Positions 3,900 through 55,437 of a stretch of DNA of 64,000 nucleotides are shown piece by piece. Every line of letters starts with the position of its first letter. Position 1 is the stretch's first letter. Under the pieces are notes generated by a model, which saw nothing but the letters and a program-made list of their open reading frames with translations, had not been told where the DNA came from and ran no database searches. The stretch covers positions 186,001 to 250,000 of the forward strand of contig MU008210.1 of the NCBI GenBank assembly GCA_010909165.1, read 5' to 3'. Position numbers and translations under genes: made by a program. The DNA comes from Anthoceros angustus (taxonomy: Eukaryota; Plantae; Anthocerotophyta).

Positions 3900-4839
3900 G
3901 TGAGCATGATGAGTTCTGGTGGTGATGCCGCCGCTTACATAAAACTCAGTTGGTTCTTGTCTCTTGCATTGTCTGAGCTGCTGGAGCGTAGGATCTCGTG
4001 CCTTCTCTTCATCATGTCTTCTGGTTCTGATTCCGATGCTCCCAAGCACCGCCGCCGTCACAAGCGTGACGCCCTAGGAAGATTTGCGACTAAGACAACT
4101 ACCAGAAGTGATCAAAACGCTGAGACGAAGGCTTCTTGTAGCAAGCGAGCTGTCGGCAGGCCGAAGGGGACAACCAAAAAGGTCTTGGAGCGGCGCAAGG
4201 CTGAACTTGCTGCTGGTCAGCAATATATGGACACTCATGAGTCTTCTCCGCCGCCACAGACTGGATACACCCCTCTGGTCAGAGTTCTGAACCTTGATTT
4301 TGCTTACTACGAAGATGGCCCAGCACGGCGTGTACGCGAAGTTCCCAAAGCCAAGGCACAGCTTCATGAAGACTCATATTGTCACTTGTGGGTCACTGAA
4401 GCATCCTTGCTCACCTCTCTGGTATTTGGTGTGGGTCGGTCTTCTTGAGCCCGAAGATCACGTGAAGGTCGAAGTGTGTGAGAACATCCACATCCATGTG
4501 GTCGGCCGTCTGATGAAGTAGCTGCTTTGTTCTTGCTATCAAGTCCTTTTGTTGCTGTTATCTTTTGCAGGATTACTTACAATCTTCTTGTTTCTCGGTT
4601 TACATGCAGAGTCTACTCTCAGACTCAGGGAGGAGGCTAAGAAGGAAGAAAAGCTGAAAGTTGAAGAAACCCCTCTCAAGAAAAGAGTACATCCTGGCTT
4701 TCCTGGAGATCTGTCACCTGGTGGCTGTCATAACCCTTACCCAATAGAAGATGAGTCTCCTTCCGAATCCCAGTCTGGAGACGAGATAGACTTTGGATAC
4801 TCTGCTGATTTTGATGGCTATGAGTCACCGGTGTTCTAG
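3900..4839 (+). CDS. Antisense accessory ORF of copia A (frameshifted); basic/NLS-like N-terminus, GRPKG motif, hydrophobic segment, acidic tail
   Basis: ORF track 3900-4448 (MSSGSDSDAPKHRRRHKR...GRPKG), 4294-4521 and 4549-4839 tile about 940 bp between RNase H and the PPT on the strand opposite to pol. Confidence 0.5.
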
Positions 4840-4869
4840 GCTAGGTTTCTTGTTAGATTGTACTGGATG

Positions 4870-5360
4870 AGAAGGCTTGTGCCTCTCCCATACCAAGGCA
4901 GAATGTGCTTGTTGTGAGCATCTGCTTAAAGCCTTTGTAAGTAGTATGTCGCGGGTTTTCTTGAGTTGAGACATCAAGTTCAATCTTTCATACTGCTAGT
5001 CCTCGATGTAATGGTATTCCACCTCCATGTGTTTCGTTCGTGCATGGAATCTGGATTCTTAGCTAAAACCATCGAACCTTGGTTGTCGGTTTGTATTGTG
5101 GTACAAGTTGGGATCGGGATGCCTAACTCCTTAAGCGATAGCTTACACCAAACTACCTCTTCTGCTGCGATCGGTACGATACTACTTACATCGAAGAAGA
5201 GCGTAAGTGCTTTTTGCTAGAGACCGGCCTGCAATTGTAATCGGTAACGGATCTTCGATTTTACGCTATCAATATCACCTGCATAATCAGAGTCAGTAAA
5301 GACTTCCAGGTCCAATGCTTTTCCTTCTTGATACTTGTATGTGATACCTAATCTGGGTGT
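4870..5360 (-). pseudogene. pol: Copia A RNase H
   Basis: Manual translation gives TPRLGITY...FTDSDYAGDIDS...TDNQGSMVLAKNP.FHARTKHMEVEYHYI...NP.DIL.TKAL. Confidence 0.9.
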
Positions 5361-5857
5361 GACGTGAAACTGATGCTAGGAACTAACTCTTAGAAGCTAG
5401 GGCTTAGCAAGTAGGTTTTGTTAGCTTAGTTTAATCAGTTGGTACTGATAATTACTAAAATGCCCTTAAACAGGAAAGTCGGAAATAACCCATAAAAATG
5501 GCCAAGCTTGGGCGGTCTCCCTCTCACACACGTGGGAGAAAGCGAACATGATCACTCCAATCCGGGGATGCGGCACCAAGTGTGGTGCCCTCACGATGCT
5601 GGCGCAAGGTGGTTGCAAAGGCGGTTGAGCACTGAAGACAAGGCGGCGGTACATGGATTGTCGAAGTCCCTAGGAGGCGAACACACGCAATTTTGTTGTT
5701 GTCGAATTTCTATGTAATGCAAAGACCGTGTGTATGCGCTGCTTTGTGTGGCAATGTGTGTAATGTCACGTGTTCGGGACTTATCAGCTCTAGGCAGCCC
5801 GTGTAGGGCAGCCCTTTACAGCAGGAAGTGAGCATCGGCACATGTGGTGCATGTCTG
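5361..5857 (+). repeat. Terminal repeat A1 (about 500 bp)
   Basis: Colinear with 13233-13714 from gatgctag(g)aactaactcttagaagc to tggtgcatgtctg. Confidence 0.92.
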
Positions 5858-6849
5858 CCGACAAGCTGAAGCATTCAACTTGATTCTGTCTTGGCACAGG
5901 ACAGAGTCTGCACCCTACGGCTCTGCGGTTTGACCCAGCTTATGGGCTTGACGTGGTGTGCATTTTGCTAGGGTTTCGTGCATGGTCGATTCTGCAGGAC
6001 TTGTTGGGTTTTACGGCTCAAGGGTGCTGGGCGGGTGCGGGATTTTCCAGGCCAGCTGTGTGCCCTGCGTCGCACAACTCAAGGCCCTCTCATAATTTTT
6101 GAGTCCTCCCATGTCTCAACGCAGCAAGTTTCCACGGCCGTCCAGAGCTCATAGCGATCGCCACACGAGTCGGCTGCTTTCAATTTGCATACCATCTTGT
6201 TTGCCTCGTTGAGACGAATCCGTTGGTATCATTTTTGTCTACTTTCGAGTGAAACAGGGACTGAATGCCTGGAGAAGTTGATCACTAAGGGTTTTAGTTG
6301 GGGAATTTGGCTATGTGCGCCAACACTTCTCTTCTGCGGGTAGGTCTGGGTCTTGTACAGCACGAGCACGAGTGAGTCGCTGACAGGCTGAGGATTCTCG
6401 CGTGTGAGTGAGGCATCCAAAAAGCTTGAGGTCGAGGGAGGATCCGAGTTGCGGCATTGGCGTGTTCGGTGTTTGTGTTTCGATTAAGGTTTTCCTCCGG
6501 TGACAATTGATGCTGGCTTCCTTGACTCACGCGTCTTGGGGCATGCCACCGGTGAAGAGGGAGATAGCCCAGTCTGCTTGCGAGGGACGTGCCGTGGTTT
6601 TCGTGAGAAGGAGAAGGGCACCACGGCGTCGATTTGTCCTTAGAGGACCTACCAGCAGCAGAGCCCGGACAAGGATCCTTTGCACCGTTAGGGTTATGGT
6701 CCCCACTTACACCTTGTGCGGTGACTGATAAGGAGGAGCAGGGGGCAGTGGGGTGGGAGTCAGAGGCACTGCGGAGGGCTGGGATTAGGCCTTTCCTCGT
6801 GGCTCGGGTCCGCATTTATCACGAAGACCAGGCAAGAGGACCTGCGTGA

Positions 6850-7800
6850 TTCGACACGATGGAAGGAGGGCCAAATGGCGGTGAGAAATTCTCGGGCGAA
6901 CACAATCGTTGAGGGATTTTAGGCTGCGAGTCAATGAGGCAATTAGTAGGGTCAAGTTCAAACATGGGCGATAACCACCTCTACATGTTCGAACAATATC
7001 ATGGTCGATGAGGCCTCGGATTTGTATGAAGCCCACCAAGCGGAGCTGACCTCAACTACGGCCGTCTCCAATCCATTATTCCAAGGGCACTGCAGATGGC
7101 CTACAATGCCAAGTGGCGGTGAAGCCACCACCAGCCATATCTGCAGTCGCCGCCGCCAGTGTTGCCACCCACCGTGATGCTCCTCTCAGCTCAGAGAGGA
7201 CAACACCACGCATTGATGAATTCATACACACCCCAAATATGCCAACCCTGGAAGAGTTCATGAAGATCCTCGAGAAGGCTTTTCCACTCAAGACTCCCGA
7301 GAAGATTGCGTGGCAAGCTTTGCGCCGGAAAGGGAGACAGTCGGATGTGTTTGTAGGCTGCAAAAGCTGCGAGATGGGACCGCATGCTCACGACCAAGAA
7401 GCGTGGAGAAATTCCTCACACCTTGAGGGTGATCACCGTTTCATTTCCATGTTGTCCTTGTGGATAAGTATGGCGATGCCTATACTTTGCAGCAGTACAT
7501 GAGGAAGCGGAGAAGAAAGAGATTGCTTACTCCGTCTTCTCCTCCAAGCATTCCAAGGCCTTCCACCATTATCAAGGCATGTTTTCAAGCAAGGGTCCGC
7601 CTCGGGGAACTTCTTCAAGGACTACACCAGCTAAGCCAGCCAAGGCGAGCAACAGTAATGACGGCCACTGTCACCATGTGCAACCATTGTGGCGATCTGA
7701 GCACATCTCACCGAATTGCAAGTGCACCAAGGCCTCTTTGCACTCATTGTCAAAAGAATGGTCATGTGAGCACCGTGCTTTCAACTTCACCCGAGAGGAG
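6850..7800 (+). pseudogene. gag: Gag of the DNMT-gypsy element, with two zinc knuckles
   Basis: EKFSGE near 6885; TLEEFMKILEKAFPLKTPEKIAWQAL (Retrotrans_gag-like); CNHCGDLEHISPNC and CTHCQKNGHV across frameshifts. Confidence 0.75.
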
Positions 7801-8599
7801 ATACCTCGGCATCGTGGAGATGCTACGGCTAGCATCAGGAGCAACTCCTGCACGGGGACTCTAAGAGCAAGCAACGAGGAGAAAGCGAAGCCAAGGTTGC
7901 GACAACGCGACAAGATGACGTCACGGAGGCCACGGTGGGCTTGGCAAGTGGGCACGCTTACAACCAGCCTCGGTGGTGGTGGAGCTAAGCTGCGGTGGGC
8001 TGCGGGTTCTGATGAAACAATGAGAAGATTATGGACACCCACATGAGGTGTTGACAGTGATTCTGTTGCCTCGTGACAAGCTAAGGGAAGATGTGCCACT
8101 ACATGGGTTGGGCATGCCATTAATCTTGCTTGGCTCGGACATCGTGTTAGCAAATGCAGGCCCATCACCGGGCGGCGAGCAAGCAATGCCTCAATCCTTT
8201 ATGCCCTTGCCACAGGCTCCATCCCATTACGGGGATACATCTTCACTCCGGGTGACAGAGCCAATGCAGAGAGATGAGGCAGCCCCCTTTAGGGCAATTG
8301 TACATGATGCCCCTTTGGTCACACATGAGCGGCGCGACGGTTGTTGCAGCACCATTAATGTCCTTGCGGGACATGGGCATGACCGAGGCGTCTCCGGCAA
8401 TGCTGCGGAAGCAGTTAGTTGCTCATGTCGGAGATTTGGTAGTCGTCGGGGACTTGTTCCTTTCCCGGATCACCGTTAGTAAATTCAGTGAGCACGGTGG
8501 GCCTTCCATTGCAAATGACCGCATGTGAATTTCCAGTTCTGGAGCATCCACGCATCCGACCAACAGTGCGAATGCAGTGAGTAACGCAGTGGTAGACAA

Positions 8600-8950
8600 C
8601 CGAGAGGACGGGTCACCTCAGTGCACCTGTGGTGGATCGGTCGCGGTCAATAAATAGTCGGCGACGGCTTGGTTTGCGAGAAGCACTTGCAAATCCCATG
8701 GAACATCCGCAGACCTCGGGGGAGCCTGGCGAGACTTGAGCTGTGCACATCACATTGAATCCAGCTCATCGGATGCCATGACCATGTCTCTGCGTGCTGA
8801 CCACGGCCACAAACTACGCGCTGAGTTTCTTTTCCCGGCGAGGTGGATGGATAATTGACGGGCCTATCGGCCAGCGGGGAGGCGGCGTTTGCATATTCCC
8901 TTGACTTGCAGCGGTGGCCCGAAGCCACGTTAGTGGTGTGCCATGCTAGC
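8600..8950 (+). pseudogene. Probable aspartic protease (very degenerate)
   Basis: VD.G-like site near 8632 and a VLTTATNY...FLFP segment at the position expected for PR; needs several frameshifts. Confidence 0.45.
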
Positions 8951-9199
8951 AAGGAGCCCGTGCAATCTTGTGAAGCTAGTCCAAGATGCTAACCGAGCCC
9001 GATGCACAATCTTGAAGATGACGCCATTCCCAGTCCATGGATCTCAGCTTGCAACATGCACAACCGATCATCCAGCGAGCTCACGCGGCTGCGGCATAGA
9101 AAAGTGAGTGATGCACTTGTTGATTCAGTGTTAACCAGCCCCAAAGATCGAAAGTCTTTGGATCACAATGTGATTACATGGGCGCCATCGTTCGGACGG

Positions 9200-9990
9200 C
9201 GGTAGAACTCTTTGGCGGGATCATCGGAGGCTCTCTTGATGAGATCGTGTGATCATAATGATTGTGACAATGATGTCAGCCAGTTCGCAGTTCAGAGGGC
9301 TGCATGAGCGTTTTCCACAAAGCGCCTTGGAGGCCTATCACGGTGCTTTCTACCGCAGGATGTACATTCAAGAAGGCCACATTCGTGCCTTGGGAAATGT
9401 GGATATGGTGATTCGTGGGAATGCTGTTCTCCCAAGCCGGGCATGGTGGTCTACAAGATGCGCCTGTTTCGGGGATCTACATCAGTCCTCACATGGGCTC
9501 AAGAATACAACCCGTGTGCTTACCTCCTTGAGAATACACCGCGCAATTTGTGAGAGCACATGTACAGACATGGCGTGGTTCAATTATCTTGGGCCTCCCA
9601 TCCTGTTAGATGCGGCCCTGTGGGCGCTTTGCTCACCGCTGAATTCGACCAACTTGGTCCCCCGATTGAGACCAGCTGCGTGGCGAGGACCCGTCCTTGC
9701 GGCTTCAATCGGTGCTGGAGGATCATCACCAGCCCGCTTGTTACCGCCCGATGAGCGTGCGCCTTGGTTCAAAACCAACACACTCGGCAGACTACGCCGT
9801 TAGCTTTCGAGTTCGCTTACGGTGAGGGACAGGCTGCTGTTGAACACCAACACGCAGCGGGGAACCCACGTCGAGCGAACGCATTATGGGCTTTCACCCC
9901 ATTCTTCTGCCCTACTACGGTTACACCACTCGGTAAGCGTGCTAGGCGAGCCATGGATGTTCACGCACTCACGTGGTTAGTGAGTCTGCA
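9200..9990 (+). pseudogene. C5 cytosine DNA methyltransferase domain inside pol
   Basis: Motifs occur in canonical order: I VELFGGI (9202-9222); LPQDV..IQEGHIRALGNVDMVI; IV WEC..FSQAG (9416-9441); VI YLLENTP (about 9521-9541); VIII LLDAA..AHR...TNL (9603-9656); IX EP..ER.RIMGFHP (9862-9900); X VLG.AMDVHALTWLV (9939-9984). Confidence 0.88.
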
Positions 9991-10289
9991 GCTTTTCGCT
10001 CCACGCTCGCTTGGCGGCATCATGGTACGAGCCTCTTGGCGGCCATGTGTCCAAAGCGGTTCATCTCCCTTTTCCGGATATGCATACATGCCTTTGGCGG
10101 ATGGTGGGGGTGGCGTCCTAGTGCTTTTCCGCCTCACCGGCCGGGAGCGTTAGATGATCCAGTCCGCAAAGCCTAAGCTAAATCGAGACTTTCCGTGGCG
10201 CATGGGGATGGGAGCGGATGGGCGTAAGACACGCATCCACACTCTCCGCTCAAGTATCGGGATCGCTTTACCATGAAGGACCTCAAGCG

Positions 10290-12750
10290 CGCAATGTGGT
10301 ATTTGGATCAACGACGGTGAGCCCATCTACGCCGCACGTTGAGCAAGACGGAGTGGGAGATGGTCGATGCTAGGTGTCGTGAGCTTCTTGAAGCGCTTAT
10401 CCGGCTATCCGGCGATTATCGCGACATCATCGCCAAGAAGGACGCCAAGGGTCATGGGAGAAACGGATGTGTGGGGACTATCGTCCATCAATGTCACCGC
10501 AGGATCGGTACCCAATGCCGACCGGAGAGATATTTGTGACATTGGGCGCCTGCCTTCTTCTCTACTTTGGACCTTCGGGTTTTAACGATTCCGTTGCGTA
10601 AGAGGACATCAAGAAGACCCGCTTCACGTCCCAAGCGTGGAATGGCTGGTGATGCCATTCGGTTCAAGAACGCACCATCAGCGGGTGATGGATCCGGTTT
10701 TGGATGTGCCAACTTGTTGTGCTATATCGACGACGTCGGTTCACGACGCCTTTGAGGATCACCGCACACTTAGAGGAGCTGTTCGTAGGCTAAGGAAGGC
10801 GAGCTCACATGTCACCCGTCCAAATGTGAATTTGGAATGAACACGTGGCATATTTAGGTCACAATCGTGCCTAAGTGATGCCCCACTCAGCCAAGGTACA
10901 GCTATCCTGCAGTGAAGGAGCCCACCAACGTGTCGACCTTGCGTGCCTTTCTTGGGTTATGCAACTATTAGGTTTACATTAATTTCAGCCGAATTGCGAA
11001 ACCCTTGAATGACATGTTGAGGAAAGACGTGGAATGGGCATGACGAGTTGGCGCAGCAAGCTTTTGACATGTTGAAGGAGCAATTGACCAGGTCACCGGT
11101 GGCTAGGCATTTTAGCAAGCCATTTGTGTTACACCGATTGGGTATCGGGACTTGGGGCGGTGCTTGCACAAGAGGATGAGCAGGGGGCGCGTGATCGCTT
11201 ATGCCTCGAGGAGTAATAACCGAGCGGAGGCCAGTCTACTATGAGGGGAGTGCCTCGCTGTTTGGGCCGTTGCCACTTCCGCCCATATTTGTATGGTCGA
11301 TTTAAGCTAGTGATCGATCATCGCCATTGAAATGGCTGATGACTAACACAAAATTGAGTGGGAAGTCGGCTCACCGGGCCATGATACTTCAAGATTATGA
11401 CTTCCTTGTGGAGCCAGCCGAGTGACACACCAAAATGCGTACATGCTATCTAGAAATCCCGGACGTGCAGTGATGTCACCGAGGCTAGCGGGACCATGAG
11501 GAGGAGATTGGTGCGATGTCATGCGGCGATTCTGCCCTTGTTGCCATGACCCGCCTTGGACAGTTTGTGTTCTTTATTGACCTAATGCAAAGGACATTTG
11601 GGAAGATGTGAATGCTCTTGATTTGCGGACGGTATGGACGAGGCCTGGACCCACCGAAAAGAACAGTGCGTGCAGCACATAATTGGCGTGATGGCTACAT
11701 GATTCGCAAGCGGGCAATGGTGTCGAGCGCTTGGTGCCACCACCGTGATAGGGTCGACTGTCGTGTGTGCACGACATGGTCACTTTGGTGTGAAGCGGAC
11801 TTACACCGCTCACACCTCATTTTTTATTGGTATGGGATGCACAACCGGTGCGAGCAGTGGTCGTGAGCCTTGTGACCGAGTCAAGGCCTCCTTTACTATG
11901 CAAGACCGGTTCTCCACCCTCCCCATCATGGGCTTGTTCTTTCACGGTCCCGCGACCTCATTGGAGAATTGACTAGGACGGCAGGCAATGTCTACATACT
12001 TGTCATGATGGAGCATTTCTCCAAATGGGTGGAGGTTGTGGCTCTATCGATAAGTCCTCGAAGCACGCCCTGCATTTTTGCACACGTGCTTAGCCGCCAG
12101 TAGTGCCGAGTGCGACCCGTGGCTCGAGTTTAGAGGAATTTCGTGACCTTTAGATGTTGCGCTTATCGATCACAAAGGCGGACTAGCAGGACCATCCTCG
12201 GGATGGCTGGTGAAAGGATGGTCCGCACCATCAAAAAGTGAAAGTTATGCTTGCAGCGTGGAAAGGAGGATTGGGACCTCATGCGCCCTACATCGCTATG
12301 GGCTACCGCATGAGTAAACATGCGCCTTGGCACACTTCTCCCTTACTTCTTGCTTTTGGTCGTGGCCCGGTCCGAGTACAATAGCTAAGAAGATGCAGGA
12401 GGTGATGATCCCGTCACATGGGCTCGAGTGATTGGGGAGCGGGCACGGCTATTTCGGTTATGCCAATGGCTATGGCCAACCTCAACATAGCTCAAGACCG
12501 GATTCCTTACGGTATGACCGCATGGGTCATTCAAAGTCAAGAAATTCCAGTTGGGGATTTCACTTGCAAAGGCAACTGTGGACACCTTGACATCGCTAGC
12601 AGCAGACATGTGCCGAGGGTGCGAGAAGTTAGGCCCAATGGAGTCGATTTTGCAGGCTCGATGGTAGGACTATTGCACCATACCAAGAACGTGCGCCCGC
12701 CACTTACCTAATTTGGACCCCGGTGATAACAACAGCCGGATTCCACGCAC
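10290..12750 (+). pseudogene. pol: Ty3/gypsy RT, RNase H and DDE integrase
   Basis: RT: LSKTEWEMVDARCRELL, RMCGDYR, QDRYPMP, EWLVMPFG.KNAP, CYIDDV. RNase H: GLGAVLAQ, VIAYASR. Integrase: GHFGVKRTY, YILVMMEHFSKWVEV, YIAMGYRMSKH, PYFLLFGR. Confidence 0.95.
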
Positions 12751-12756
12751 TACCCG

Positions 12757-12876
12757 TGCGTTTGTGGGAGGATGATGATGAGGAGCTTATGCTTCTGTGA
12801 TGCAATGGGGTTTTCATTTGTTTTGCCTTACCCCTCCGCAGCTCGAGCAACTCGTATTGTGCAAAGTGTGCTGGAA
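12757..12876 (+). pseudogene. PHD finger at the integrase C-terminus
   Basis: C-(x)-VCGR..DDEELMLLC(D).CN.GFHLFCLTPP.....YCAKC gives the C4HC3 spacing with 2-3 small indels. Confidence 0.8.
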
Positions 12877-13091
12877 ATGCTTTTCGAGATGATATTTATT
12901 TCTGACATGTGATGTTGGGGTGTGATGGAATTGTGTGGACCTTTTGTTTGCTAGACGCACCAGCTTTCCATTGTGAATGCGGCCAGGAGTTCTAGGATTC
13001 TTGCTGGCCTCATTCTTGGTTCCATGTGGCATTTGTTTCAAACGTTGCGATGCCTTGTTTCTTTCTTTTCGATTGTTTCTGCCCGTCCGGG

Positions 13092-13228
13092 GTAGCATAG
13101 GTAGAATTTTAGCACTTTTCTTTTGTTTGGCCTCGACAGCCCTCTTTTCCCTTGCACAAGGCCGGGTGAAAACCAGAAGAAGTGTGAGCAAGTCTGGTTT
13201 TGCATACGACGGTGATGAAGACGCCGAC
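13092..13228 (+). repeat. Repeat B1
   Basis: gtagcataggtagaattttagcac...gacggtgatgaagac, colinear with 13715-13864. Confidence 0.88.
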
Positions 13229-13232
13229 GGTG

Positions 13233-13714
13233 GCGTGGCGATGCTAGAACTAACTCTTAGAAGCTAGGGCTTAGCAAGTAGGTTTTGTTAGCTTAGTTTA
13301 ATCGGTACCGATAATTACTAAAATGCCCTTAAACAGAAAGTCGGAAATAACCGCAAAAATGGCCAAGCTTGGGCAGTCTCCCTCTCACACATCGCGTGGG
13401 AGAAAGCGAACATGATCACTCCAATCCAGATGCCGGCACCAAGAGTGTGGTGCCCTCATATCACGCAAGGTGGTTGCAAGGCGTTGCGGAGCACAAGAGA
13501 CACTGGGTGGGCTTGTCGAAGTCCCTAGGAGGAACGCTAATGAACACACAATTTTGTTGTTGTCGAATTTCTAGGCTGTAATGCAAAGACCTGTGTGTGT
13601 GGCGCCATTGTGGCAATGTGTGTAATGTGCGGTGTTCGCGGGACTTATCACTCTAGGCGGCGTGTAGGGCAGCCTTTAATTTTCTCGAATGAGCATCGTG
13701 ATGGTGCATGTCTG
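13233..13714 (+). repeat. Repeat A2
   Basis: Direct copy of 5361-5857. Confidence 0.92.
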
Positions 13715-13864
13715 GTAGCATAGGTAGAATTTTAGCACTTTTCTTTTTGTTTGGCACAGACGGTGAGCCCTCTTTTCCCTTGCGTGAAGGCGGGTGAAAC
13801 CGGGAAGAAGTGTGAGCAAGGCTGCTTGGTTTCTTGTTCTTGTTGACGGTGATGAAGACACGAC
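13715..13864 (+). repeat. Terminal repeat B2
   Basis: Direct copy of B1; ends at the right junction with the host copia. Confidence 0.88.
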
Positions 13865-14760
13865 GGTGTTCCTTTCAGTGTCTGAACACACGCTTAAGAC
13901 TTGTCAATGCTCGCCCACGGATTTTCCAAGAGCTGGGAGAGTACACTTATAGAATAAGCTATTTCAAGTCTCTGCCTCGTGTTACTAGCGATATAAGCTT
14001 GCCAACACCTTGTCTGGCGCCTCTTCATCATTCTTTCTCATCACGTAGTTGGTGACATAGCCTTGCTAAGTTTGACTTGCTTTGCCATGGGTGTTGATGC
14101 GGGCTTGGCATCCTTTAAACCAGTACCGGCACAATCAAGAGGTAAGCGTGGTTGAGTAAGAGTCATAACCCGTTGTTTTCTATCCCTCCTCAATGTGTAT
14201 TCCAAAGGCAGACTCTTGTAAAGGGTCCCAAAGCAGGACATCTTAAACTTAGTGGCCAACACATGCTTGTTATAAAGGCACATCGATCGCGGGCGATGTC
14301 GGATCGTCCGTAGGCGCGGATAGCATATAACCTCTCCTTTTGAGTATATGTAGGCTCATGCACTTTGGCTCTTTATTGAATCCAAGCGTAAAAGTTACTC
14401 AGATCTGTAGGGTAGCATTCCATTTCATAGCTGACTGCTTTAACCCATATAGACACTTGATCAGCTTACAGGCATACCCATCAGCTTACCCTTCACTACA
14501 TATCCAGGCGGTTGCTGCATGTATATTTCTGTGTCTAATTTGCCGTATAAGAAAGCTGTTTTGACATTGTACATTTGCAACTCATAATCGTAATATGTGG
14601 ATATGGCAAGTATAATTCGAAGAGTGGACAACTTGACTACTGGAGAAAACGTTTCAAGATAGTCCAAGCGGAGATCCAGAGAATCCCTTGCCGCAAGCAG
14701 GCCTTGTAACGATCAAAGGTACCATCTGCCTTAACCTTTAGTTTGCACTCCTGATGAGGA
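13865..14760 (-). pseudogene. pol: Copia A reverse transcriptase
   Basis: KLKVKADGTFDRYKA.L; DYLETFSPVVKLSTLRIILAI; NVKTAFLYGKLDTEIYMQQPPGY (ORF 14461-14667). Confidence 0.93.
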
Positions 14761-32099: not shown

Positions 32100-33635
32100 T
32101 TTCTCCTTCCTTCTCTGCATCAGTGAGGGCTTTCCGGGTCAAGATTTCCATTGCTCTTTGCCTGATGTTTGATTTGTCCATATCTACCATAGAGCATCTT
32201 CAAAGAGTCTTCATCCCCATTCGCCGCACCATGCGGATCTCCTCACTAATCCTTTGGACCTTTTTCGTGCTGGGCTCCTCTCCTGGCTCAGGCCCTTCCC
32301 TTGCTCGTGGGGTGAGGGAATTCCTTACCCCTCCCCCTTCCTCGGCGGATCTAATCCCGCCCTTAATCTCTTCTGGTGGGGTTGTCTCCCCCACCACCTC
32401 AGCGGCTCCTCCGAGGGGCATACTACCGGACCCCCCGGCTCCTTCATCCTCAGCCAGGCCTCCGCGGCCCGACTCCCCAGAGGCCGCGCTCCCGCTGCTC
32501 CACTCCCGGTGGTCGACTACGTGCACAGCTACCGTAGACACCCCCCTGACCCGCCGCTTCCCCCTCCTTCTCGCCTCCTTCTGCCATCTCCTCCTTGGCG
32601 TCGGCTCTCCCGTCTCCTCCTCGGACTCCTCGGAGTCCATGTCGCTCATGGCCTCATCAAAGTCGGGCCTCTGCACTTGCGCTCCTTCTGTCATCATCAT
32701 GAGGACCTAATGTCCTCCTCTTGAAGTAACTTCATTGTTGGCCTTCAAAATCTGTTGGAGATGAGCCCCAAGCTATGATATTGCATTTGGAGATCATCAA
32801 TCTCAGTGGGCCACTCTCCATCTTCACCTACCCCTTGTAGGCATCTCTTGCGGGTTAATTCTCCCACCTTGACATGGAGGTCACATTCTCCTCCTTGTTT
32901 CCCTCATTGGTTGGCTAATTTGCTGAAGGGCATAGTGCCCAAATCTCTTCCTCACCACCATCCATGCACCACCTTCTTGTGGTGCTCCTCCTCTGGAACC
33001 TCCTCCGCTCCGGTCCTTGTTGCAAGCCCTTCCTTTCTTGCCAATCTTCTCGCGCTCCAATTCCTGATTCTTGGTCTTGTGTCTCCTCCGGCCTTCTCCT
33101 TCAAATTATCGGGTCCTCCAATTCTTCTTCCATGTCCGGATCTTGATGGCTTGGGTAGCCATCACTGCTCCTCCATTTGTTGGATCGCACCTTCTCCTTC
33201 CTAGAGCCTCGTTTTGCCCTTCGTTCTTGCTCTAATTGGGCAAAATGCTCCTCATATACACTCCAGAGTCCCTTTGGGGTTGTTCGGATGGCTCTTTCTC
33301 TGTTTGACAACCTTCCCTCCGGGACCTTCTCCGCTCTTGTTGATCACAAGATCGCTGGAGCTTCTCCTGACCTTCTCCGCTTGCCTTCTCGTCGGACTCC
33401 ATGGCCTCCATGCCATTTGGTCCTGCTCCTCGGCATCAGGCTTTGACACTTCCTCTTGCATGCCCAAGGAGGCTGCTAGTTAGCCCCTTCAATCCACATG
33501 GTGAGTGCTTCCAAGCACTCGGCAACTCAGGGCCCAAATTCCACCCCTGGGCCTCTTCTGGAAATCTCCAGCTCCTACTCCAGGGCCATCACGCGGCGGC
33601 GTGGGTCCCCTCACCGTCGCTCCATCCGCTCTCCC
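32100..33635 (-). pseudogene. 3' half of the Athila-like accessory ORF (acidic, low complexity)
   Basis: ORF 32200-32700 and others; 32565-33635 is colinear with 34186-35310. Confidence 0.65.
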
Positions 33636-33637
33636 AG

Positions 33638-34138
33638 CGCGGGTCGATGGAAGAACTGGAAGGCATGGCCGACCTTCCGGTGCTGATCGAGGAGAAGCGC
33701 GACAAGCTTCTGACGAGCCTGGAGGGCGCTGAGCGGGAGCGGCGCACTGCGGCAGACGAATTGGCGCAGGCCGACAGCGGGTTGCGGGCCGCTCAGCAGG
33801 CGTTGCGGCTCGCGCAAGGTCAAGTCGGCGAGGCGCGCGAAGGCAAGGCACGCATCGAGGCAAAGCTGGAAAGCGCGCGGGCCCGCCGCCAGGAGGAGGC
33901 TCGGAAAATCCGCGAGGTGTTTGAGGTCGCGCCGGAGGATTGTCTCGCTCTCGCCGAGCTGAAGCCGGGCTCGCAGCTGCCGCATTTGGCAGACGCCGAC
34001 AAGCAATTGACGCGGCTTAAGGGTGACCGGGAGCGTCTCGGCGGCGTCAATCTGCAAGCCGATGAGGAACTCACCGTGCTCCAGGCGCAGCACGATACGA
34101 TGGAAGCCGAGCGCGCTGACGTTGAAGACGCCATTGCC
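33638..34138 (+). CDS. smc: Fragment of bacterial chromosome-segregation protein SMC (C-terminal coiled-coil arm), alphaproteobacterial-like
   Basis: Indel-free 167-codon frame ...LTRLKGDRERLGGVNLQADEEL..., matching the SMC RERLG.VN..A.EE motif; high-GC bacterial codon usage; ends at the N at 34139. Confidence 0.85.
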
Positions 34139-34185
34139 NTAGGTGGTCACCTACCGTGGTAGGGTGACCCCCTGAGGTGGGCTGT

Positions 34186-42100: not shown

Positions 42101-43986
42101 CTGCGCTAATCATGCTTTTGTCAACTTGAACATGCCTAACGTCCTTCATGAATGAAGATCCGTTGTCAAACTTGAGTTGCACATCACCGCCGCGATCGGC
42201 ATGTAGTTATTTCAAGCCTAACGCATCCTTTCCTTGTAGCATCATCGTGCTAAACCACTCTCTATGAGGAGTAACATGGAAAGATGCACGAGTCAATTAT
42301 CCAATTTAATAAATGACTATCCACGGCTGTTAATTGTGCAGCATTCAAGTAAGAAGAGATAAGGACATCTCCGTCCTCAACAGAATTTAACTCTTCCAAC
42401 CTGACATTCGAAGTCGCCTTCTTGTCGTCCTGCTTCTTCTCTTTTCCTTGGTCCTTTTTGAACTTCTCGCACTCTCTTTTGAAGTGACCCCTTTTGTGAC
42501 AATAGTGACACTCCACATTCTTGTTACGACTACGAGATTTGCTACGAGAAAAGCTTCTATCCGGTTGCTTCCCCTTCGCAGTGGACCTCCCTCTCACTAT
42601 GAGGGCACTGGAACCTTTGGAAGGTTCCATATTTTTCCTGTTCACCTCCTCAGTTAACAGGCTACCTTCTACATTTACAATGGTAAGACCACTAGCGAGG
42701 CGAGTACTCGGGAGGCTGCGAAGGTGTCCCAACTCTCGTAATGTGACCAGCGAAACATAGCTCTCACGGAATCAGAATGTGATACCTTGAGATGAGAGTG
42801 GCTGAAAATGGTATTGAAATCATTCGGATGATCGGACATCCTCGTCCCTTCCTTCATCTTCAAGTCCACCAATTTGTTCAACCAATACACCGAAGCCGCA
42901 CTTTGCTTCTCATCTGAGTCCACACACGCCACAGTAACTTGTGGTCTTATCTTTCACATTGAAGTACAACTTTTGACAATGTTAGCATGATAGTAGATCT
43001 AGCAAGCTCATCCAGTCCGCCACTCATCCCGTCATACTATCGGTTTGGCCTAACAACTTTATGGGCTTGATCGCTTTTTCTAGAACATTATACACTTGTT
43101 CTTTCGAGCGGAAGTTAGTACCATCTAACTTCTCGATATTGAACATGACGTTTTCGATGATGAAGACATCATGACTCAAAAATCGACTCGCCTTGTCGGA
43201 AAAGTCAAAAAAAAAAAATCACGTGCGGCCGTGTATTGCGTTGCTGTTTACGAGTATTCCGCGAATATTTGAATTTTCACCACCGCGGCACCGCGGTGTT
43301 GGTGCGGGTTCTTGGCGCCCGCGCCTCGCCCCAGCGCTCTCGCCCCGCGCGCTCGCCCGGCCTCGCCCCGCGCCCGCGCCTCGCCCGCTCGCGGCCTCGC
43401 CCCGCGCCACGCGCCACGGCCTCGCCCCGGCCTCGCCCCGCGCCCGCCTCGCGCCCGCGGCCTCGCCGCGCCGCGCCGCGCCGCGCCTCGCGGCCTCGCC
43501 GCGCCGCGCCTCGCCCGCTCGCCCCGCGCCGCGCCCGCGCGCTCGCCCGGCCCGCGCCGCGCCGCGCCTCGCGGCGCGCGCGGCCCGCGCCGCCCGGCCC
43601 GGCGCGGCCTCGCCGCTTCGCGGCCTTGCCGCGTTCGCGGCCTCGCCCGCTCGCCCGCTCGCGGCCTCGCCCCGCGCCTCGCCGCGATATGGATCACACC
43701 GCAATTCTGCCACCCTGCGGCGAATCACAACACCGGACCAAAGCTCGATACCGGTTGAAGGATCGTGTGGCGGCCATGATGGTGGAAAGAGGAGAGGAGG
43801 AAAATGTATCTCTCACATTGAGATGAGGCTTGGGGTATTTATACCCTCAATGGGGCTCCTAGGAAGCTCCACAAGAAGCCCCTAGGAAGCAGTAGAAGCT
43901 TCCTAGTTATTAGCTTACTAAACTAATGACACCTAACTTAGACTAAGCGTATTAGTCTAAGTACATTGGGCTTTAATACCCTTACA
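39165..43986 (-). mobile_element. Full-length Ty1/copia element D (Tnt1-like gag)
   Basis: LTRs 39165-39402 and 43756-43986 (TG...CA); TSD CCTAG (39160-39164 and 43987-43991); PBS Met-like 43743-43753; PPT 39403-39413; pol 39430-43150. Confidence 0.96.
43310..43690 (-). repeat. Extremely GC-rich degenerate repeat in the 5' leader of copia D
   Basis: Reiterated cgcggcctcgcc(cc)gcg units between PBS and gag. Confidence 0.9.
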
Positions 43987-53070: not shown

Positions 53071-53569
53071 CTCATCCTACCTATCTACCTACCTAACTAC
53101 CCTAAATGTAGGGAGCCCTTGCTGCCCTACATGCTACCCATGTAGGGTGACCAGGGCTGCCCTACATACTACTTACATCTCTGTCCCCTACTTGTCAACA
53201 CCCTACATGGGTAGGGATGTAAAGGTATTAAAGCCCAATGTACTTAGACTAATACACTTAGTCTAAGTTAGGTGTCAGTTAAGTATCATTAGTTTAGCTG
53301 AAGCTAATCACTAGGAAGCTTCTTGTGCTCCTTCCTAGGGGCTTCTTGTAGAGCTTCCTAGGGAGCCCTATTGGAGGGTATAAATACCCTTTAAGCCTCA
53401 TCTCAATGTGAGAGAGTTACACTTGCCTCCTCCTCTCCTCTCCTCTTTCCACCATCATGTGCCCACGATCCTTCAAGCCATCGAGCCTTTGGTTTGGTTG
53501 TGTTGTGATGCTAGAATTTTCTAGCTGCGTGGCGGCTCGTGGAATTGCAGTGATCCGGATCGCGGCGCT

Positions 53570-54400
53570 GCGAGCGCCCGCGGTGGCGGGGCGAGGCCGT
53601 GGCGAGGCAAAACCGCGACCTGGCGCGAGCGGCCGTGGCGCGAGGCCGGCGGGGCGGAGCGGCGCGGGCCGTGCGGGCGCAGCGCGGGCCGTGCGGCACA
53701 GGCGGCGGGCGGGCGGGCGCGGCGCGGCGAGCGCGCGGCGAGCCGCGGCGCGGCGGCCGCGGCGAGCCGCGGCCTTGGCCGCGGCCTTGGCCGCGGCGCG
53801 CGGCGCGGCCGCAGCGCGGCGCGCAGCGCCCGGCCGCGGCCGCGGCCGCGGGCGCTGGCGCGCGGGCGCAGCGGCGCAGCGAGGCCCAGCCGCCGGCCGC
53901 GGCCTTGGCGCGCGGCCGGCGCCGCAGCGCGCGCAGCGCTGGCGCGCGCCCGGCCGCGGCCGGCGCGGCCGCGGCGCTGAGCGCGCGGCGCGGCGCGGCG
54001 CGCGCGGCCGTGGCGAGGCCGCGACCAGCGCGGCGCGGCGGCCGCGCGCGGCCGCGAGCGGCGGCGGCCGGCCGTGCGGCAGCGGAGGCGTCGCGGCGCG
54101 GCGCGCGGCAGCCGCAGCGCCCGGCGCGGCCGCGGCCTTGGCCGCGGCCCAGCAGCCGCCGGGAGCCCGGCCCAGCAGCGGCGAGCCGCGGCGAGCCGCG
54201 GCGCCCAGCCAGCGGCGCGGCGCGGCGAGCCGCGGCGCGCGCCCAGCAGCGGCGCGGCCCGGCGCGGCCGCGAGCGCGGCCCGGCCGCGGCGGCCGCGGC
54301 CCAGCCACCGCGGCCTTGGCCGCGGCCCGGCGTGGCGCGCGCGGCGCGGGCCGTGGCGAGGCCGCGGCCGTGAGTTGCGGTGCGAGCGCGCGGTGGCGAA
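53570..54400 (+). repeat. Extremely GC-rich leader repeat of copia E (about 830 bp)
   Basis: Units such as ggcgaggccgcg and cggccttggccgcgg; about twice the length of the homologous tract in D. Confidence 0.9.
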
Positions 54401-55437
54401 AATTCGGCCGAAATACGAATACTCAGTGGAATAGTCAGCGGCAAAATACACGGTAGGTGGCTTTCTTCTTTGACTTTTACAAGGCGAGTCGAGTGTTTTA
54501 TCTGTATCGATTTTTGAGTCATGATGTCTTCATCATCGAAAAGCGTCATGTTCAATATCGAGAAGTTAGATGGTACTAACTTCCGTTCGGAAAGAACAAG
54601 TGTATAATGTTCTAGTGCGAGCGGATCAAGCCCATAAAGTTGTTAGGCGTCAAACCGGATAGTATGACGGGATGAGTGGCAGGACCTGGATGAGCTTGCT
54701 AGATCTACTATCATGCTAACATTGTCAAAAACAGTGTACTTCAATGTGAAAGATAAGACCACGAGTTACGGACTGTGGCAGAAGTTGTGTGACCTGTATG
54801 AGAAGCAAAGTGCGGCTTCTCAGGTGTATTGGTTAAAGCTGGTGGACTTGAAGATGAAGGAAGGGACGAGGATGTCCGATCATCTGAATGATTTCAATAC
54901 CATTTTCAGCCGACTCTCATCTCAAGGTATCACGTTCCCAGTTAGTGAGAGCTATGTTTATTGGTCACATTACGGAGAGTTGGGACACCTTTTCTGCTCA
55001 CGAGTAATTACGCCTGCTAGTGGTCTTACCATTGTAAATGTAGAAGGTAGCACATGGCGAGGTGAGCAGGAAAAACATGGAACCTTCCAAAGGTTCCGGT
55101 GCCCTCATAGTGAGAGGGAGGTCCCTGCGAAGGGAAGCAACGGAGCTTCTCTCGTAGCAAATCTCGTAGTCGTAACAAGAATGTGGAGTGTCACTATTGT
55201 CACAAAGGGTCACTTCAAAAAGTGCGAGAAGTTCAAAAGGACCAAGGAAAAGAAGAAGCGGGGCGACAAGGCGACTTAATGTCGAGGTTGGAAGAGTTAA
55301 ACTACTGTTGAGGACGGAGATGTCCTTATCTCTTCTTACTTGAATCTTGCACAATTAACGTAGTGGATAGTCATTTATTACGCAATTGGATAATTGACTG
55401 GTGCATCTTTCCATGTTACTCCTCATAGAGTGGTTTA

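What the first reader, a model, noticed from the sequence alone, without database searches (positions are those of the whole stretch)
9200..9990. Ty3/gypsy retrotransposon carrying its own C5 DNA methyltransferase between protease and RT
Seen: six C5-MTase motifs (I VELFGGI; IV WEC..FSQAG with the catalytic Cys retained; VI LLENTP; VIII LDAA..AHR..TNL; IX ER.RIMGF; X LG.AMD) lie in canonical order, on the pol strand, exactly between the probable PR and RT. The ORF track hides this because of frameshifts. Established: DNMT capture by retrotransposons has been reported in Symbiodinium dinoflagellates and in Ty3/gypsy elements of the charophyte Klebsormidium nitens; it is not a standard feature of land-plant LTR elements. 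Inference: the neighbouring Athila-like and Tnt1-like families suggest a land-plant host, so this may be a surviving or new lineage of self-methylating elements that methylate cDNA in the particle to mimic or evade host epigenetic surveillance.
Basis: partly seen in the sequence, partly recalled or inferred. Interest (0 to 1): 0.95.

Follow-up and report, generated by a model that had tools for sequence, protein, structure and literature searches.

The report
Dead DNMT3-carrying gypsy retrotransposon copy
This stretch is the decayed remains of a DNA methyltransferase gene module built into a jumping gene (a Ty3/gypsy-type retrotransposon) in what looks like a bryophyte genome; such elements were described from a green alga, so this extends a known oddity to a land plant, but this copy cannot work.

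Summary
A frameshift-aware alignment of window 9202-9988 (+) to a profile of DNMT domains from related retroelements scores 116 half-bits. The other 207 window tiles reach at most 42, and 300 shuffles at most 48. Motifs I, IV, VI, VIII, IX and X are collinear and the motif IV Cys is kept. About 12 frameshifts and 2 stops break the frame.

The domain is DNMT3-type: the relatives' profile hits DNMT3A at 1e-17, and their predicted fold matches only DNMT3A/B/C. It lies upstream of RT-RNaseH-integrase-(PHD) in an 8,504-bp element (5361-13864). That element has DIRS-like split repeats (A...B-A-B) and a 5-bp target duplication, and it sits inside a copia RNase H.

Four metagenome contigs show the same DNMT-RT-RH-INT-PHD order. 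A larger chlorophyte family has RT-RH-DNMT-INT-PHD. The protease is unconfirmed in this copy.

RT and integrase are as decayed as the DNMT, so the whole copy is dead. The closest known kind is KnitGypsy-Dnmt3 of Klebsormidium, which has the same repeat layout.

The host looks like a bryophyte, but this evidence is indirect. First readers flagged similar elements at least 44 times on other pieces of this genome, all unchecked.

Self-methylation of cDNA remains an inference.

The parts
5356..5360 (.). Left copy of the 5-bp target-site duplication, GGTGT
   Evidence: the same pentamer flanks both ends. Removing the element and one copy restores the copia reading frame on the minus strand (...ACVQTLKGTPRLGITYKYQE).
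5361..5857 (+). Terminal repeat A1 (5' end of the element)
   Evidence: 82% identical including gaps to A2. K2P 0.145 and 19 gap events over 464 aligned bases.
7050..7860 (+). gag-like region with decayed CCHC-type zinc-knuckle strings (CNHCGD..., CTHCQKNGH). Read by eye only.
   Evidence: translations. Pfam found nothing and the protein search found nothing. Weak.
8100..8420 (+). Possible protease relic (LILLGSD at about 8130; MSGATVV at about 8330). Not confirmed.
   Evidence: only a score-27 alignment to the PR piece of relative L009. Pfam found nothing.
9202..9988 (+). DNMT3-type C5 cytosine methyltransferase domain relic. Motifs I, IV, VI, VIII, IX and X are in canonical order. About 12 frameshifts and 2 stops.
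   Evidence: The DNMT3 type follows from the relatives' profile and predicted fold.
10330..11413 (+). Reverse transcriptase and RNase H relic (FSTLDLR, WLVMPFG, YIDD). 13 frameshifts and 3 stops.
   Evidence: tblastn from 10333. (score 370, the only RT-RH in the element). (alignment 10446-11413).
11772..12645 (+). Integrase relic: H2C2 zinc-binding part and DDE core (GNVYILVMMEHFSKWVEVVAL)
   Evidence: There is also a weak Pfam rve match.
12730..12871 (+). Probable PHD-finger relic after the integrase
   Evidence: score 57 in the collinear position, but a zinc-knuckle region elsewhere reaches 58, so it is not significant alone. Relatives L007-L009 have a PHD at the same place (scores 98-105). 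Pfam PHD is found in P0004, P0015 and P0029.
13091..13232 (+). Repeat B1
   Evidence: about 79-83% identical to B2.
13233..13713 (+). Repeat A2
13714..13864 (+). Repeat B2 (3' end of the element). The layout is A1...B1-A2-B2.
   Evidence: Relative L008 has the same B-A-B tail.
13865..13869 (.). Right copy of the target-site duplication, GGTGT
4300..5355 (-). Copia RNase H part (..FTDSDYAGD..) interrupted by the insertion. It continues at 13870-14700 on the minus strand (copia RT).
   Evidence: translations; frame restored across the empty site

Best explanation
Window 5361-13864 is one old, dead copy of a Ty3/gypsy-type retrotransposon. Its pol gene carried a DNMT3-type cytosine-5 DNA methyltransferase domain upstream of RT, and a PHD finger after the integrase. 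A DDE integrase inserted it into a copia element, leaving a 5-bp duplication. It has since decayed evenly along its length.

Shown here:
- The DNMT relic is real and homologous to DNMT domains of related elements.
- The order is DNMT-RT-RH-INT.
- The termini are split direct repeats, A...B-A-B.
- The same architecture recurs in independent contigs.
- In those relatives the DNMT evolved under about the same constraint as RT and integrase.

Inferred, for the family when active: the polyprotein-borne de novo methyltransferase acts on the element's own newly made cDNA or on its integration site, and the PHD finger reads histone tails to steer integration. That would let the element set or mimic the host's methylation state. 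For this copy itself, no function is left.

The confidence of 0.85 is for the identity and anatomy. The inferred mechanism alone would rate about 0.5.
For: DNMT homology:
- The profile score is 116, against a null maximum of 42 (window tiles) and 48 (shuffles).
- The relic is closest to the DNMT of contig L006: score 165 with 105/249 identical, against a median of 75 for chlorophyte-type domains.

DNMT3 type:
- The family profile hits DNMT3A at 1e-17, DRM at 8e-9 and M.HhaI at 1e-5.
- PF00145 scores above its cutoff in relatives P0049 and P0055.
- The AlphaFold model has pLDDT 94.8 and the top 50 PDB fold matches are all DNMT3A/B/C, with TM 0.79-0.85 by target.

Domain order:
- There is a single RT-RH, at 10.0-11.5 kb, and none upstream of the DNMT.
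- L006-L009 have the order DNMT-RT-RH-INT, with a PHD after INT in L007-L009 (scores 98-105; L006 only 46, not convincing).

Inheritance:
- The RT-RH and DNMT trees give the same split between this group and the chlorophyte RT-RH-DNMT-INT group (aLRT 85/98 and 98).

Constraint:
- Among L006-L009, dN/dS is 0.44-0.61 for the DNMT, 0.35-0.69 for RT-RH and 0.31-0.64 for INT.
- Motif IV Cys, motif VI Glu-Asn and motif VIII Arg-x-Arg are 98-100% conserved in 90 relatives.

Repeat layout:
- It matches the published description of KnitGypsy-Dnmt3, 'structure of repeats same as DIRS, domains typical of Gypsy' (PMC5890265).

Even decay:
- There is 1 frameshift per about 66 nt in the DNMT and 1 per about 74 nt in RT-RH. 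A1 versus A2 differ by 19 gap events over about 500 nt.
Against: - No Pfam or PDB hit on the window's own pieces.
- The protease is not confirmed here.
- The PHD relic is not significant on its own.
- No sequence-level comparison with Klebsormidium copies or cellular DNMT3s was possible, so same-lineage membership rests on architecture.
- All DNMT-before-RT relatives found are also broken by stops.
- Catalytic activity of Gypsy-type DNMT3 has never been shown. The yeast test was negative and called inconclusive.
- Motif IV has Glu-Cys instead of the canonical Pro-Cys.
- Part of the frameshift count may be assembly error. Another agent called this assembly 'full of errors', and no reads could be listed.
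Confidence: 0.85

Rival explanations
1. The motif strings are a chance resemblance in decayed, GC-rich retroelement sequence, and there never was a methyltransferase.
For: There is no Pfam or PDB hit on any stop-free piece. Each motif is short and lies in a different frame.
Against: The collinear profile alignment scores far outside both nulls. It covers 320 of 353 profile positions. Unusual derived residues are shared with relatives: W-E-C, E-N-T-P, CG.(F/Y).HR and LTWL.
Confidence: 0.01
2. The segment is a one-off. A fragment of a host DNMT3 gene, or of another mobile element, landed inside this gypsy copy and is not part of the element's own design.
For: Only one copy is visible in this window. 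About 1 kb of unexplained sequence separates the protease-like strings from the DNMT.
Against: Four independent contigs from four samples carry the DNMT at the same place and on the same strand, about 560-580 nt upstream of RT. The DNMT and RT-RH trees are congruent. The DNMT is as decayed as RT and INT. First-reader notes list many more such copies in this genome, unchecked.
Confidence: 0.03
3. The element belongs to a contaminating green alga or is a mis-assembly, not to the plant genome.
For: The only named relatives of the DNMT domain are chlorophytes: Haematococcus, Chlamydomonas eustigma, Chromochloris, Monoraphidium and Cymbomonas. No sequencing run could be listed to check the junctions. 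The element's GC (0.53) is above the window mean (0.49).
Against: The element sits inside a copia RNase H with a clean 5-bp duplication and a restored host-copia frame. The chlorophyte family has a different domain order and forms the other side of both trees. A neighbouring element on the same contig is liverwort-like.
Confidence: 0.04
4. The domain was real but served the element as an RNA- or protein-directed or purely structural module, not as a DNA cytosine methyltransferase. Alternatively, it was already catalytically inert in the family, DNMT3L-like.
For: Motif IV reads Glu-Cys, not Pro-Cys. The Klebsormidium Gypsy-Dnmt3 domain gave no methylation in yeast. Motif X is reported as poorly conserved in K. 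nitens copies.
Against: The catalytic Cys, the E-N of motif VI, the R-x-R of motif VIII and the SAM-binding glycines are 97-100% conserved across 90 relatives. The fold is DNMT3A/B-like over the whole domain. The yeast result was called inconclusive because human DNMT3B also failed.
Confidence: 0.15

Closest known systems
KnitGypsy-Dnmt3 of Klebsormidium nitens (de Mendoza et al. 2018, PMC5890265)
   Same: It is a Ty3/gypsy-type element with an unrearranged DNMT3-like domain inside Pol. It has terminal repeats in the DIRS-like A...B-A-B layout with Gypsy-type domains. Its host is a streptophyte.
   Different: The host here appears to be a land plant (bryophyte), not a charophyte alga. A PHD finger follows the integrase, and the paper does not mention one. 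This copy is dead. No sequence comparison with K. nitens copies was possible, and the paper's text does not give the domain order.
Chlorophyte gypsy family with RT-RH-DNMT-INT-PHD (found here; Haematococcus, Chlamydomonas eustigma, Chromochloris, Monoraphidium, Cymbomonas and many metagenome contigs)
   Same: The DNMT3-type domain is homologous, with the same derived motifs (G-W-E-C-Q-D-L-S, E-N-T, LDAAxFGSxAHRxRNFWTNL). The integrase and PHD tail are the same, and it is the sister group in the RT-RH tree.
   Different: The DNMT lies between RNase H and integrase in all 119 hits that could be ordered. Here and in L006-L009 it lies upstream of RT.
SymbioDIRS-Dnmt3 of Symbiodinium
   Same: It has a DNMT3-type domain inside a retroelement Pol, and A-coding-B-A-B repeats.
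   Different: It uses a tyrosine recombinase, not a DDE integrase. Its host is a dinoflagellate. It is the only class with demonstrated de novo CG methylation in yeast.
Cellular DNMT3A/3B/3C (animals) and plant DNMT3/DRM
   Same: The catalytic fold and motif order are the same. These are the best sequence and structure matches.
   Different: There are no PWWP or ADD domains. The domain is embedded in a retroelement polyprotein. Motif IV is Glu-Cys. It is not circularly permuted as DRM is.
Chromoviruses (chromodomain on the integrase C-terminus)
   Same: A chromatin-reader module is appended to a Ty3/gypsy integrase. This is an analogy for the PHD tail.
EpiLTRs of Cymbomonas and Euglena (bioRxiv 10.64898/2026.05.21.726589)
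   Same: They are LTR elements carrying a cytosine DNMT together with a chromatin reader.
   Different: Their DNMT is sister to DNMT4 and sits at the 3' end of pol. It comes with an adenine methyltransferase and a chromodomain.

Membership tests
C5 cytosine DNA methyltransferase (PF00145), DNMT3 type | Conserved motifs I, IV, VI, VIII, IX and X in canonical, non-permuted order | tested here: met
   The frameshift-aware profile alignment covers all six motifs in order.
C5 cytosine DNA methyltransferase (PF00145), DNMT3 type | Significant match to the family model | tested here: inconclusive
   PF00145 gives no hit on the window's stop-free pieces. It is above cutoff in relatives P0049 (36.9 bits) and P0055 (32.4). 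The window matches the relatives' profile far above the null. PF00145 misses even the intact relative P0029, which scores 516 bits on the family profile.
C5 cytosine DNA methyltransferase (PF00145), DNMT3 type | Catalytic Pro-Cys in motif IV, Glu in motif VI (ENV), Arg-x-Arg in motif VIII | tested here: inconclusive
   Cys, Glu-Asn and the first Arg are present in the relic (WEC, ENT, AHRIR). Pro is replaced by Glu here and in 68% of relatives.
C5 cytosine DNA methyltransferase (PF00145), DNMT3 type | Closer to DNMT3 than to DNMT1, DNMT2, DRM or bacterial enzymes | tested here: met
   This was tested on the relatives' profile and model, not on the relic itself. DNMT3A scores 1e-17, DRM 8e-9, HhaI 1e-5 and DNMT2 3e-3. 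The top 50 fold matches are all DNMT3A/B/C.
C5 cytosine DNA methyltransferase (PF00145), DNMT3 type | Open reading frame able to make an enzyme | tested here: not met
   There are about 12 frameshifts and 2 stops in 787 nt.
Ty3/gypsy LTR retrotransposon | Pol order RT - RNase H - DDE integrase | tested here: met
   Relatives have Pfam RVT_1, RT_RNaseH, Integrase_H2C2 and rve.
Ty3/gypsy LTR retrotransposon | Two identical-at-insertion long terminal repeats | tested here: not met
   The repeats are split, A1...B1-A2-B2, and there is no B after A1.
Ty3/gypsy LTR retrotransposon | Short target-site duplication made by the integrase | tested here: met
   A 5-bp GGTGT lies at both ends, and the copia frame is restored.
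Ty3/gypsy LTR retrotransposon | Aspartic protease upstream of RT | tested here: inconclusive
   It is not detectable in the window. Relative L009 has an FIDTGAQ motif and a weak Pfam match (E 0.04) upstream of its DNMT.
Gypsy-DNMT3 elements (KnitGypsy-Dnmt3) | DNMT3-like domain inside the Pol ORF of a Gypsy element | tested here: met
Gypsy-DNMT3 elements (KnitGypsy-Dnmt3) | DIRS-like arrangement of terminal repeats | tested here: met
   compared with the paper's figure legend. Relative L008 also has it.
Gypsy-DNMT3 elements (KnitGypsy-Dnmt3) | Sequence and phylogenetic grouping with the K. nitens copies | not testable with these tools
   No K. nitens sequence could be obtained. The searches returned none by name, and the paper's supplements hold no sequences.

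The most novel reading that the evidence does not exclude
An ancient, Viridiplantae-wide lineage of Ty3/gypsy-type elements carries a DNMT3 'writer' and a PHD 'reader', with DIRS-like termini. One branch (chlorophytes) keeps the DNMT between RNase H and integrase. The other moved it upstream of RT and survived into land plants (bryophytes). The many copies flagged elsewhere in this genome suggest it may have been active there recently. If so, land plants have hosted self-methylating retroelements, and the module's position inside pol is evolutionarily mobile.
Probability: 0.4. Interest if true: 0.7.

Novelty: new member of a known kind. Interest (0 to 1): 0.5.

Why it matters
DNA methylation is the host's main weapon against transposons, so transposons that carry their own de novo methyltransferase are a rare inversion of that arms race. 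In green plants they have been described only from the alga Klebsormidium.

A relic in a bryophyte-like genome, together with sister contigs and a large chlorophyte family with a permuted domain order, suggests the combination of DNMT3 and PHD is old, widespread and modular. It also points to where intact copies could be found for the activity test that failed for the Klebsormidium domain.

This particular copy adds only a dated fossil.

Tried and rejected
- Pfam on ten stop-free DNMT pieces found nothing.
- PDB phmmer on two pieces found nothing.
- Pfam on gag, PR, RT, INT and PHD pieces gave only marginal RT_RNaseH_2 and rve matches. Piecewise searches are therefore useless on this copy.
- hmmsearch of the family HMM on X-masked six-frame translations gave only a -3.1 bit fragment. 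I replaced it with my own frameshift-tolerant alignment.
- A first version of that alignment with linear gap costs did not separate the target from the null (65 against 66). Affine gaps did (80 against 54).
- The protein search with the gag piece found no hits.
- The look-up of sequencing runs listed none, so read laying could not be used. The junctions and the indels could not be checked against reads.
- Rfam on the whole window found nothing.
- The protease search with distant relatives' PR regions gave scores of 35-43, not meaningful.
- Marchantia contig L005 holds only an integrase fragment, with no DNMT or RT.
- The metagenome scan with the intact RT of L004 gave no intact DNMT-before-RT copy. 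It found one more relic locus, L011-L014.
- I considered a second RT-RH upstream of the DNMT, which would give the chlorophyte order. I rejected it because no tile between 7.5 and 9.5 kb scores above background.
- In one search I had mislabelled L004 as chlorophyte-type. Its RH-INT gap is short, so it cannot hold a DNMT there.

Full report
**What is there**

- Motif I: VELFGGIIGG, 9202-9231.
- Motif IV: W-E-C at 9416-9424, then FSQAG at 9427-9441 after a frameshift.
- Motif VI: YLLENTP, 9521-9541.
- Motif VIII: LLDAA then CGRFAHR*IR, about 9603-9660.
- Motif IX: SERIMGF, 9874-9894.
- Motif X: RAMDVHALTWL, about 9947-9979.

Pfam and PDB searches on the stop-free pieces gave nothing. The same piecewise approach is also blank or marginal for this copy's obvious RT (FSTLDLR, WLVMPFG, YIDD) and integrase. 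The blank therefore says nothing either way.

**Finding relatives**

A 75-residue in-frame integrase piece was searched against 1.84 billion representative proteins. It returned 42 hits, the best long ones carrying integrase plus a PHD finger.

Metagenome scaffold L002 has, between RNase H and integrase, a domain reading ...EPFGGLGAGLE...GWECQDLSPAG...FIIENTA...LDAAQFGSYAHRVRNFWTNL...GRAMDA. These are the same unusual variants as in the window: W-E-C instead of P-C, and E-N-T instead of E-N-V.

A search with that domain found 119 proteins. The named ones are from Haematococcus, Chlamydomonas eustigma, Chromochloris, Monoraphidium, Cymbomonas and Edaphochlamys. Every one that can be ordered reads RT-RH-DNMT-INT, usually with a PHD after INT. 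PF00145 is above its cutoff in P0049 and P0055. It misses P0029, which scores 516 bits on the family profile.

**Statistical test of the observation**

I built a profile from 90 of these domains (353 positions) and wrote a frameshift-tolerant local alignment with affine gaps and a frameshift penalty.
- Tile 9001-10200 (+) scores 116 half-bits.
- The 207 other tiles of the window, on both strands, have mean 32, sd 3.4 and maximum 42.
- 300 dinucleotide shuffles of the target have mean 33, sd 3.9 and maximum 48.
- Extrapolating a Gumbel tail from either null puts the chance probability below 1e-10. This is an extrapolation.

The alignment spans profile 21-340 and window 9202-9988. It has 87 of 256 residues identical to the consensus, about 12 frameshifts and 2 stops.

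**What kind of methyltransferase**

The family profile (alignment A1) hits DNMT3A at 1e-17, then DNMT3C and DNMT3B, plant DRM at 8e-9, M.HhaI at 1e-5 and DNMT2 at 3e-3. An AlphaFold model of a family member has pLDDT 94.8. It matches only DNMT3A/B/C chains in the top 50, with target-normalised TM 0.79-0.85.

In 90 relatives the motif IV Cys, motif VI Glu-Asn, motif VIII Arg-x-Arg and the motif I glycines are 97-100% conserved. The residue before the Cys is Glu in 68% of them.

These tests are on relatives. The relic itself shares the diagnostic residues.

**The element**

- Repeats A1 (5361-5857) and A2 (13233-13713) match, and B1 (13091-13232) matches B2 (13714-13864). No B follows A1, so the layout is A1...B1-A2-B2.
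- GGTGT flanks both ends (5356-5360 and 13865-13869). Deleting the element and one pentamer restores a copia RNase H frame on the minus strand. This is therefore an integrase-made insertion, 8,504 bp long, nested in a copia.
- Profiles of RT-RH and integrase find a single RT-RH at 10.0-11.5 kb and the integrase at 11.8-12.6 kb. Nothing RT-like lies upstream of the DNMT. The order is DNMT-RT-RH-INT.
- A PHD-like string at 12730-12871 sits in the expected place, but its score (57) is matched by a zinc-knuckle region elsewhere (58).
- The protease could not be shown in this copy.

**It is a family design**

Contigs L006, L007, L008 and L009, from four JGI samples, each have DNMT, then RT-RH about 560-580 nt downstream, then INT. 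L007-L009 also have a PHD after INT (scores 98-105); the L006 PHD score (46) is not convincing.
- L009 has an FIDTGAQ protease motif with a weak Pfam match upstream of the DNMT.
- L008 has the B-A-B tail.
- The window's relic is closer to L006 (score 165, 105/249 identical) than to any chlorophyte-type domain (median 75, maximum 112).

RT-RH and DNMT trees both separate {window, L006-L009; plus L004 in the RT-RH tree} from the chlorophyte RT-RH-DNMT-INT group. For RT-RH the window's group has aLRT 85 and the chlorophyte clade 98; the split in the DNMT tree has aLRT 98. The window's DNMT row is a long branch.

Among L006-L009, dN/dS is 0.44-0.61 for the DNMT, 0.35-0.69 for RT-RH and 0.31-0.64 for INT. 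The DNMT was therefore constrained about as much as the essential enzymes.

All of these relatives are themselves broken by stops. A further metagenome scan found no intact one.

**State of this copy**

| Region | Damage |
|---|---|
| DNMT (787 nt) | about 12 frameshifts, 2 stops |
| RT-RH (968 nt) | 13 frameshifts, 3 stops |
| A1 vs A2 (about 500 nt) | 19 gap events, K2P 0.145 |

Decay is uniform, as expected for a neutral fossil. Under commonly assumed plant substitution rates this is some millions of years old, but that dating rests on an assumed rate.

Some indels may be assembly errors. Another agent called this assembly 'full of errors', and no reads were available.

**Host**

A neighbouring gypsy integrase (63279-63845) has its best named hits in Marchantia (70-78%), Riccia and Calypogeia, then in ferns and Taxus. 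Follow-up notes on other pieces of this genome call it a bryophyte, probably a hornwort. I did not test that. A land-plant host is likely, but it is supported only indirectly.

**Comparison with what is known**

de Mendoza et al. 2018 described Gypsy elements with an unrearranged DNMT3 in Pol in Klebsormidium nitens. Their repeats are 'the same as that of a DIRS retrotransposon'. That survey held no liverwort, no hornwort and none of the chlorophytes found here.

Later papers in the library speak only of 'streptophytes (Gypsy-DNMT3)'. A full-text search found no report of such elements in bryophytes.

In the yeast assay only SymbioDIRS-Dnmt3 methylated DNA. The KnitGypsy domain did not, and the authors called this inconclusive.

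I therefore file this as a new member of a known kind: a dead copy in a probable land plant. The PHD tail and the permuted chlorophyte sister family are possibly undescribed extras.

**Mechanism**

For the active family I commit to the following:
- A de novo DNMT3-type enzyme delivered within Pol acts on the element's cDNA or on its new insertion.
- A PHD reader biases the integration site.

About 55% of my belief goes to DNA self-methylation of this kind. About 15% goes to a non-DNA or non-catalytic role. The rest is unknown. None of this is shown here.

**Earlier notes in this scan**

First readers flagged similar DNMT-gypsy elements at least 44 times on other pieces of this genome. All are unchecked.

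Noticed in passing
L002:9119-9979 and proteins P0043-P0161: There is a large chlorophyte and metagenome family of gypsy elements with RT-RH-DNMT3-INT-PHD, giving 119 hits. Pfam PF00145 often misses the domain. I found no description of this family in the paper library.
   Followed up: partly
L002:1-9982: A single 3,676-residue ORF has more than 2,500 residues upstream of RT and no Pfam match. L001 has a 1,274-residue upstream ORF, also without Pfam hits.
   Followed up: no
window 13220-13245 and 5356-5365: The internal B1-A2 junction contains GGTG between the end of B and the start of A. This resembles the GGTGT target duplication. It could be coincidence or a trace of the replication mechanism.
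   Followed up: no
window 33401-34162 (+), within the GC-rich 32-36 kb stretch: This is a 253-residue ORF with a long coiled-coil-like sequence that looks SMC-like by eye. It contains an N run. Pfam finds nothing.
   Followed up: partly
window 43193-43885 and 53417-54555, both strands: Very GC-rich Ala/Arg/Pro-rich low-complexity tracts give overlapping ORFs of up to 344 residues on both strands.
   Followed up: no
window 46.1-48.4 kb, 50.1-52.9 kb, 55.5-58.0 kb: Three blocks of near-identical tandem duplications (94-100% identity) have 1.3-1.6 kb spacing inside copia-like sequence. The spacing drifts by 9-33 nt between segments.
   Followed up: no
window 0.5-4.5 kb (-), 17.5-21 kb (-), 58.5-64 kb (+): Three copies or fragments of another gypsy family (liverwort-like integrase) surround the copia that hosts the DNMT element.
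   Followed up: partly
L006, L007, L008, L009: In L006 and L007 the DNMT is broken only by stop codons (6 and 9, no frameshifts), and these contigs are AT-rich (GC 0.35-0.41). The window copy is broken mostly by 1-2-nt indels. The contrast may reflect assembly quality rather than biology.
   Followed up: no
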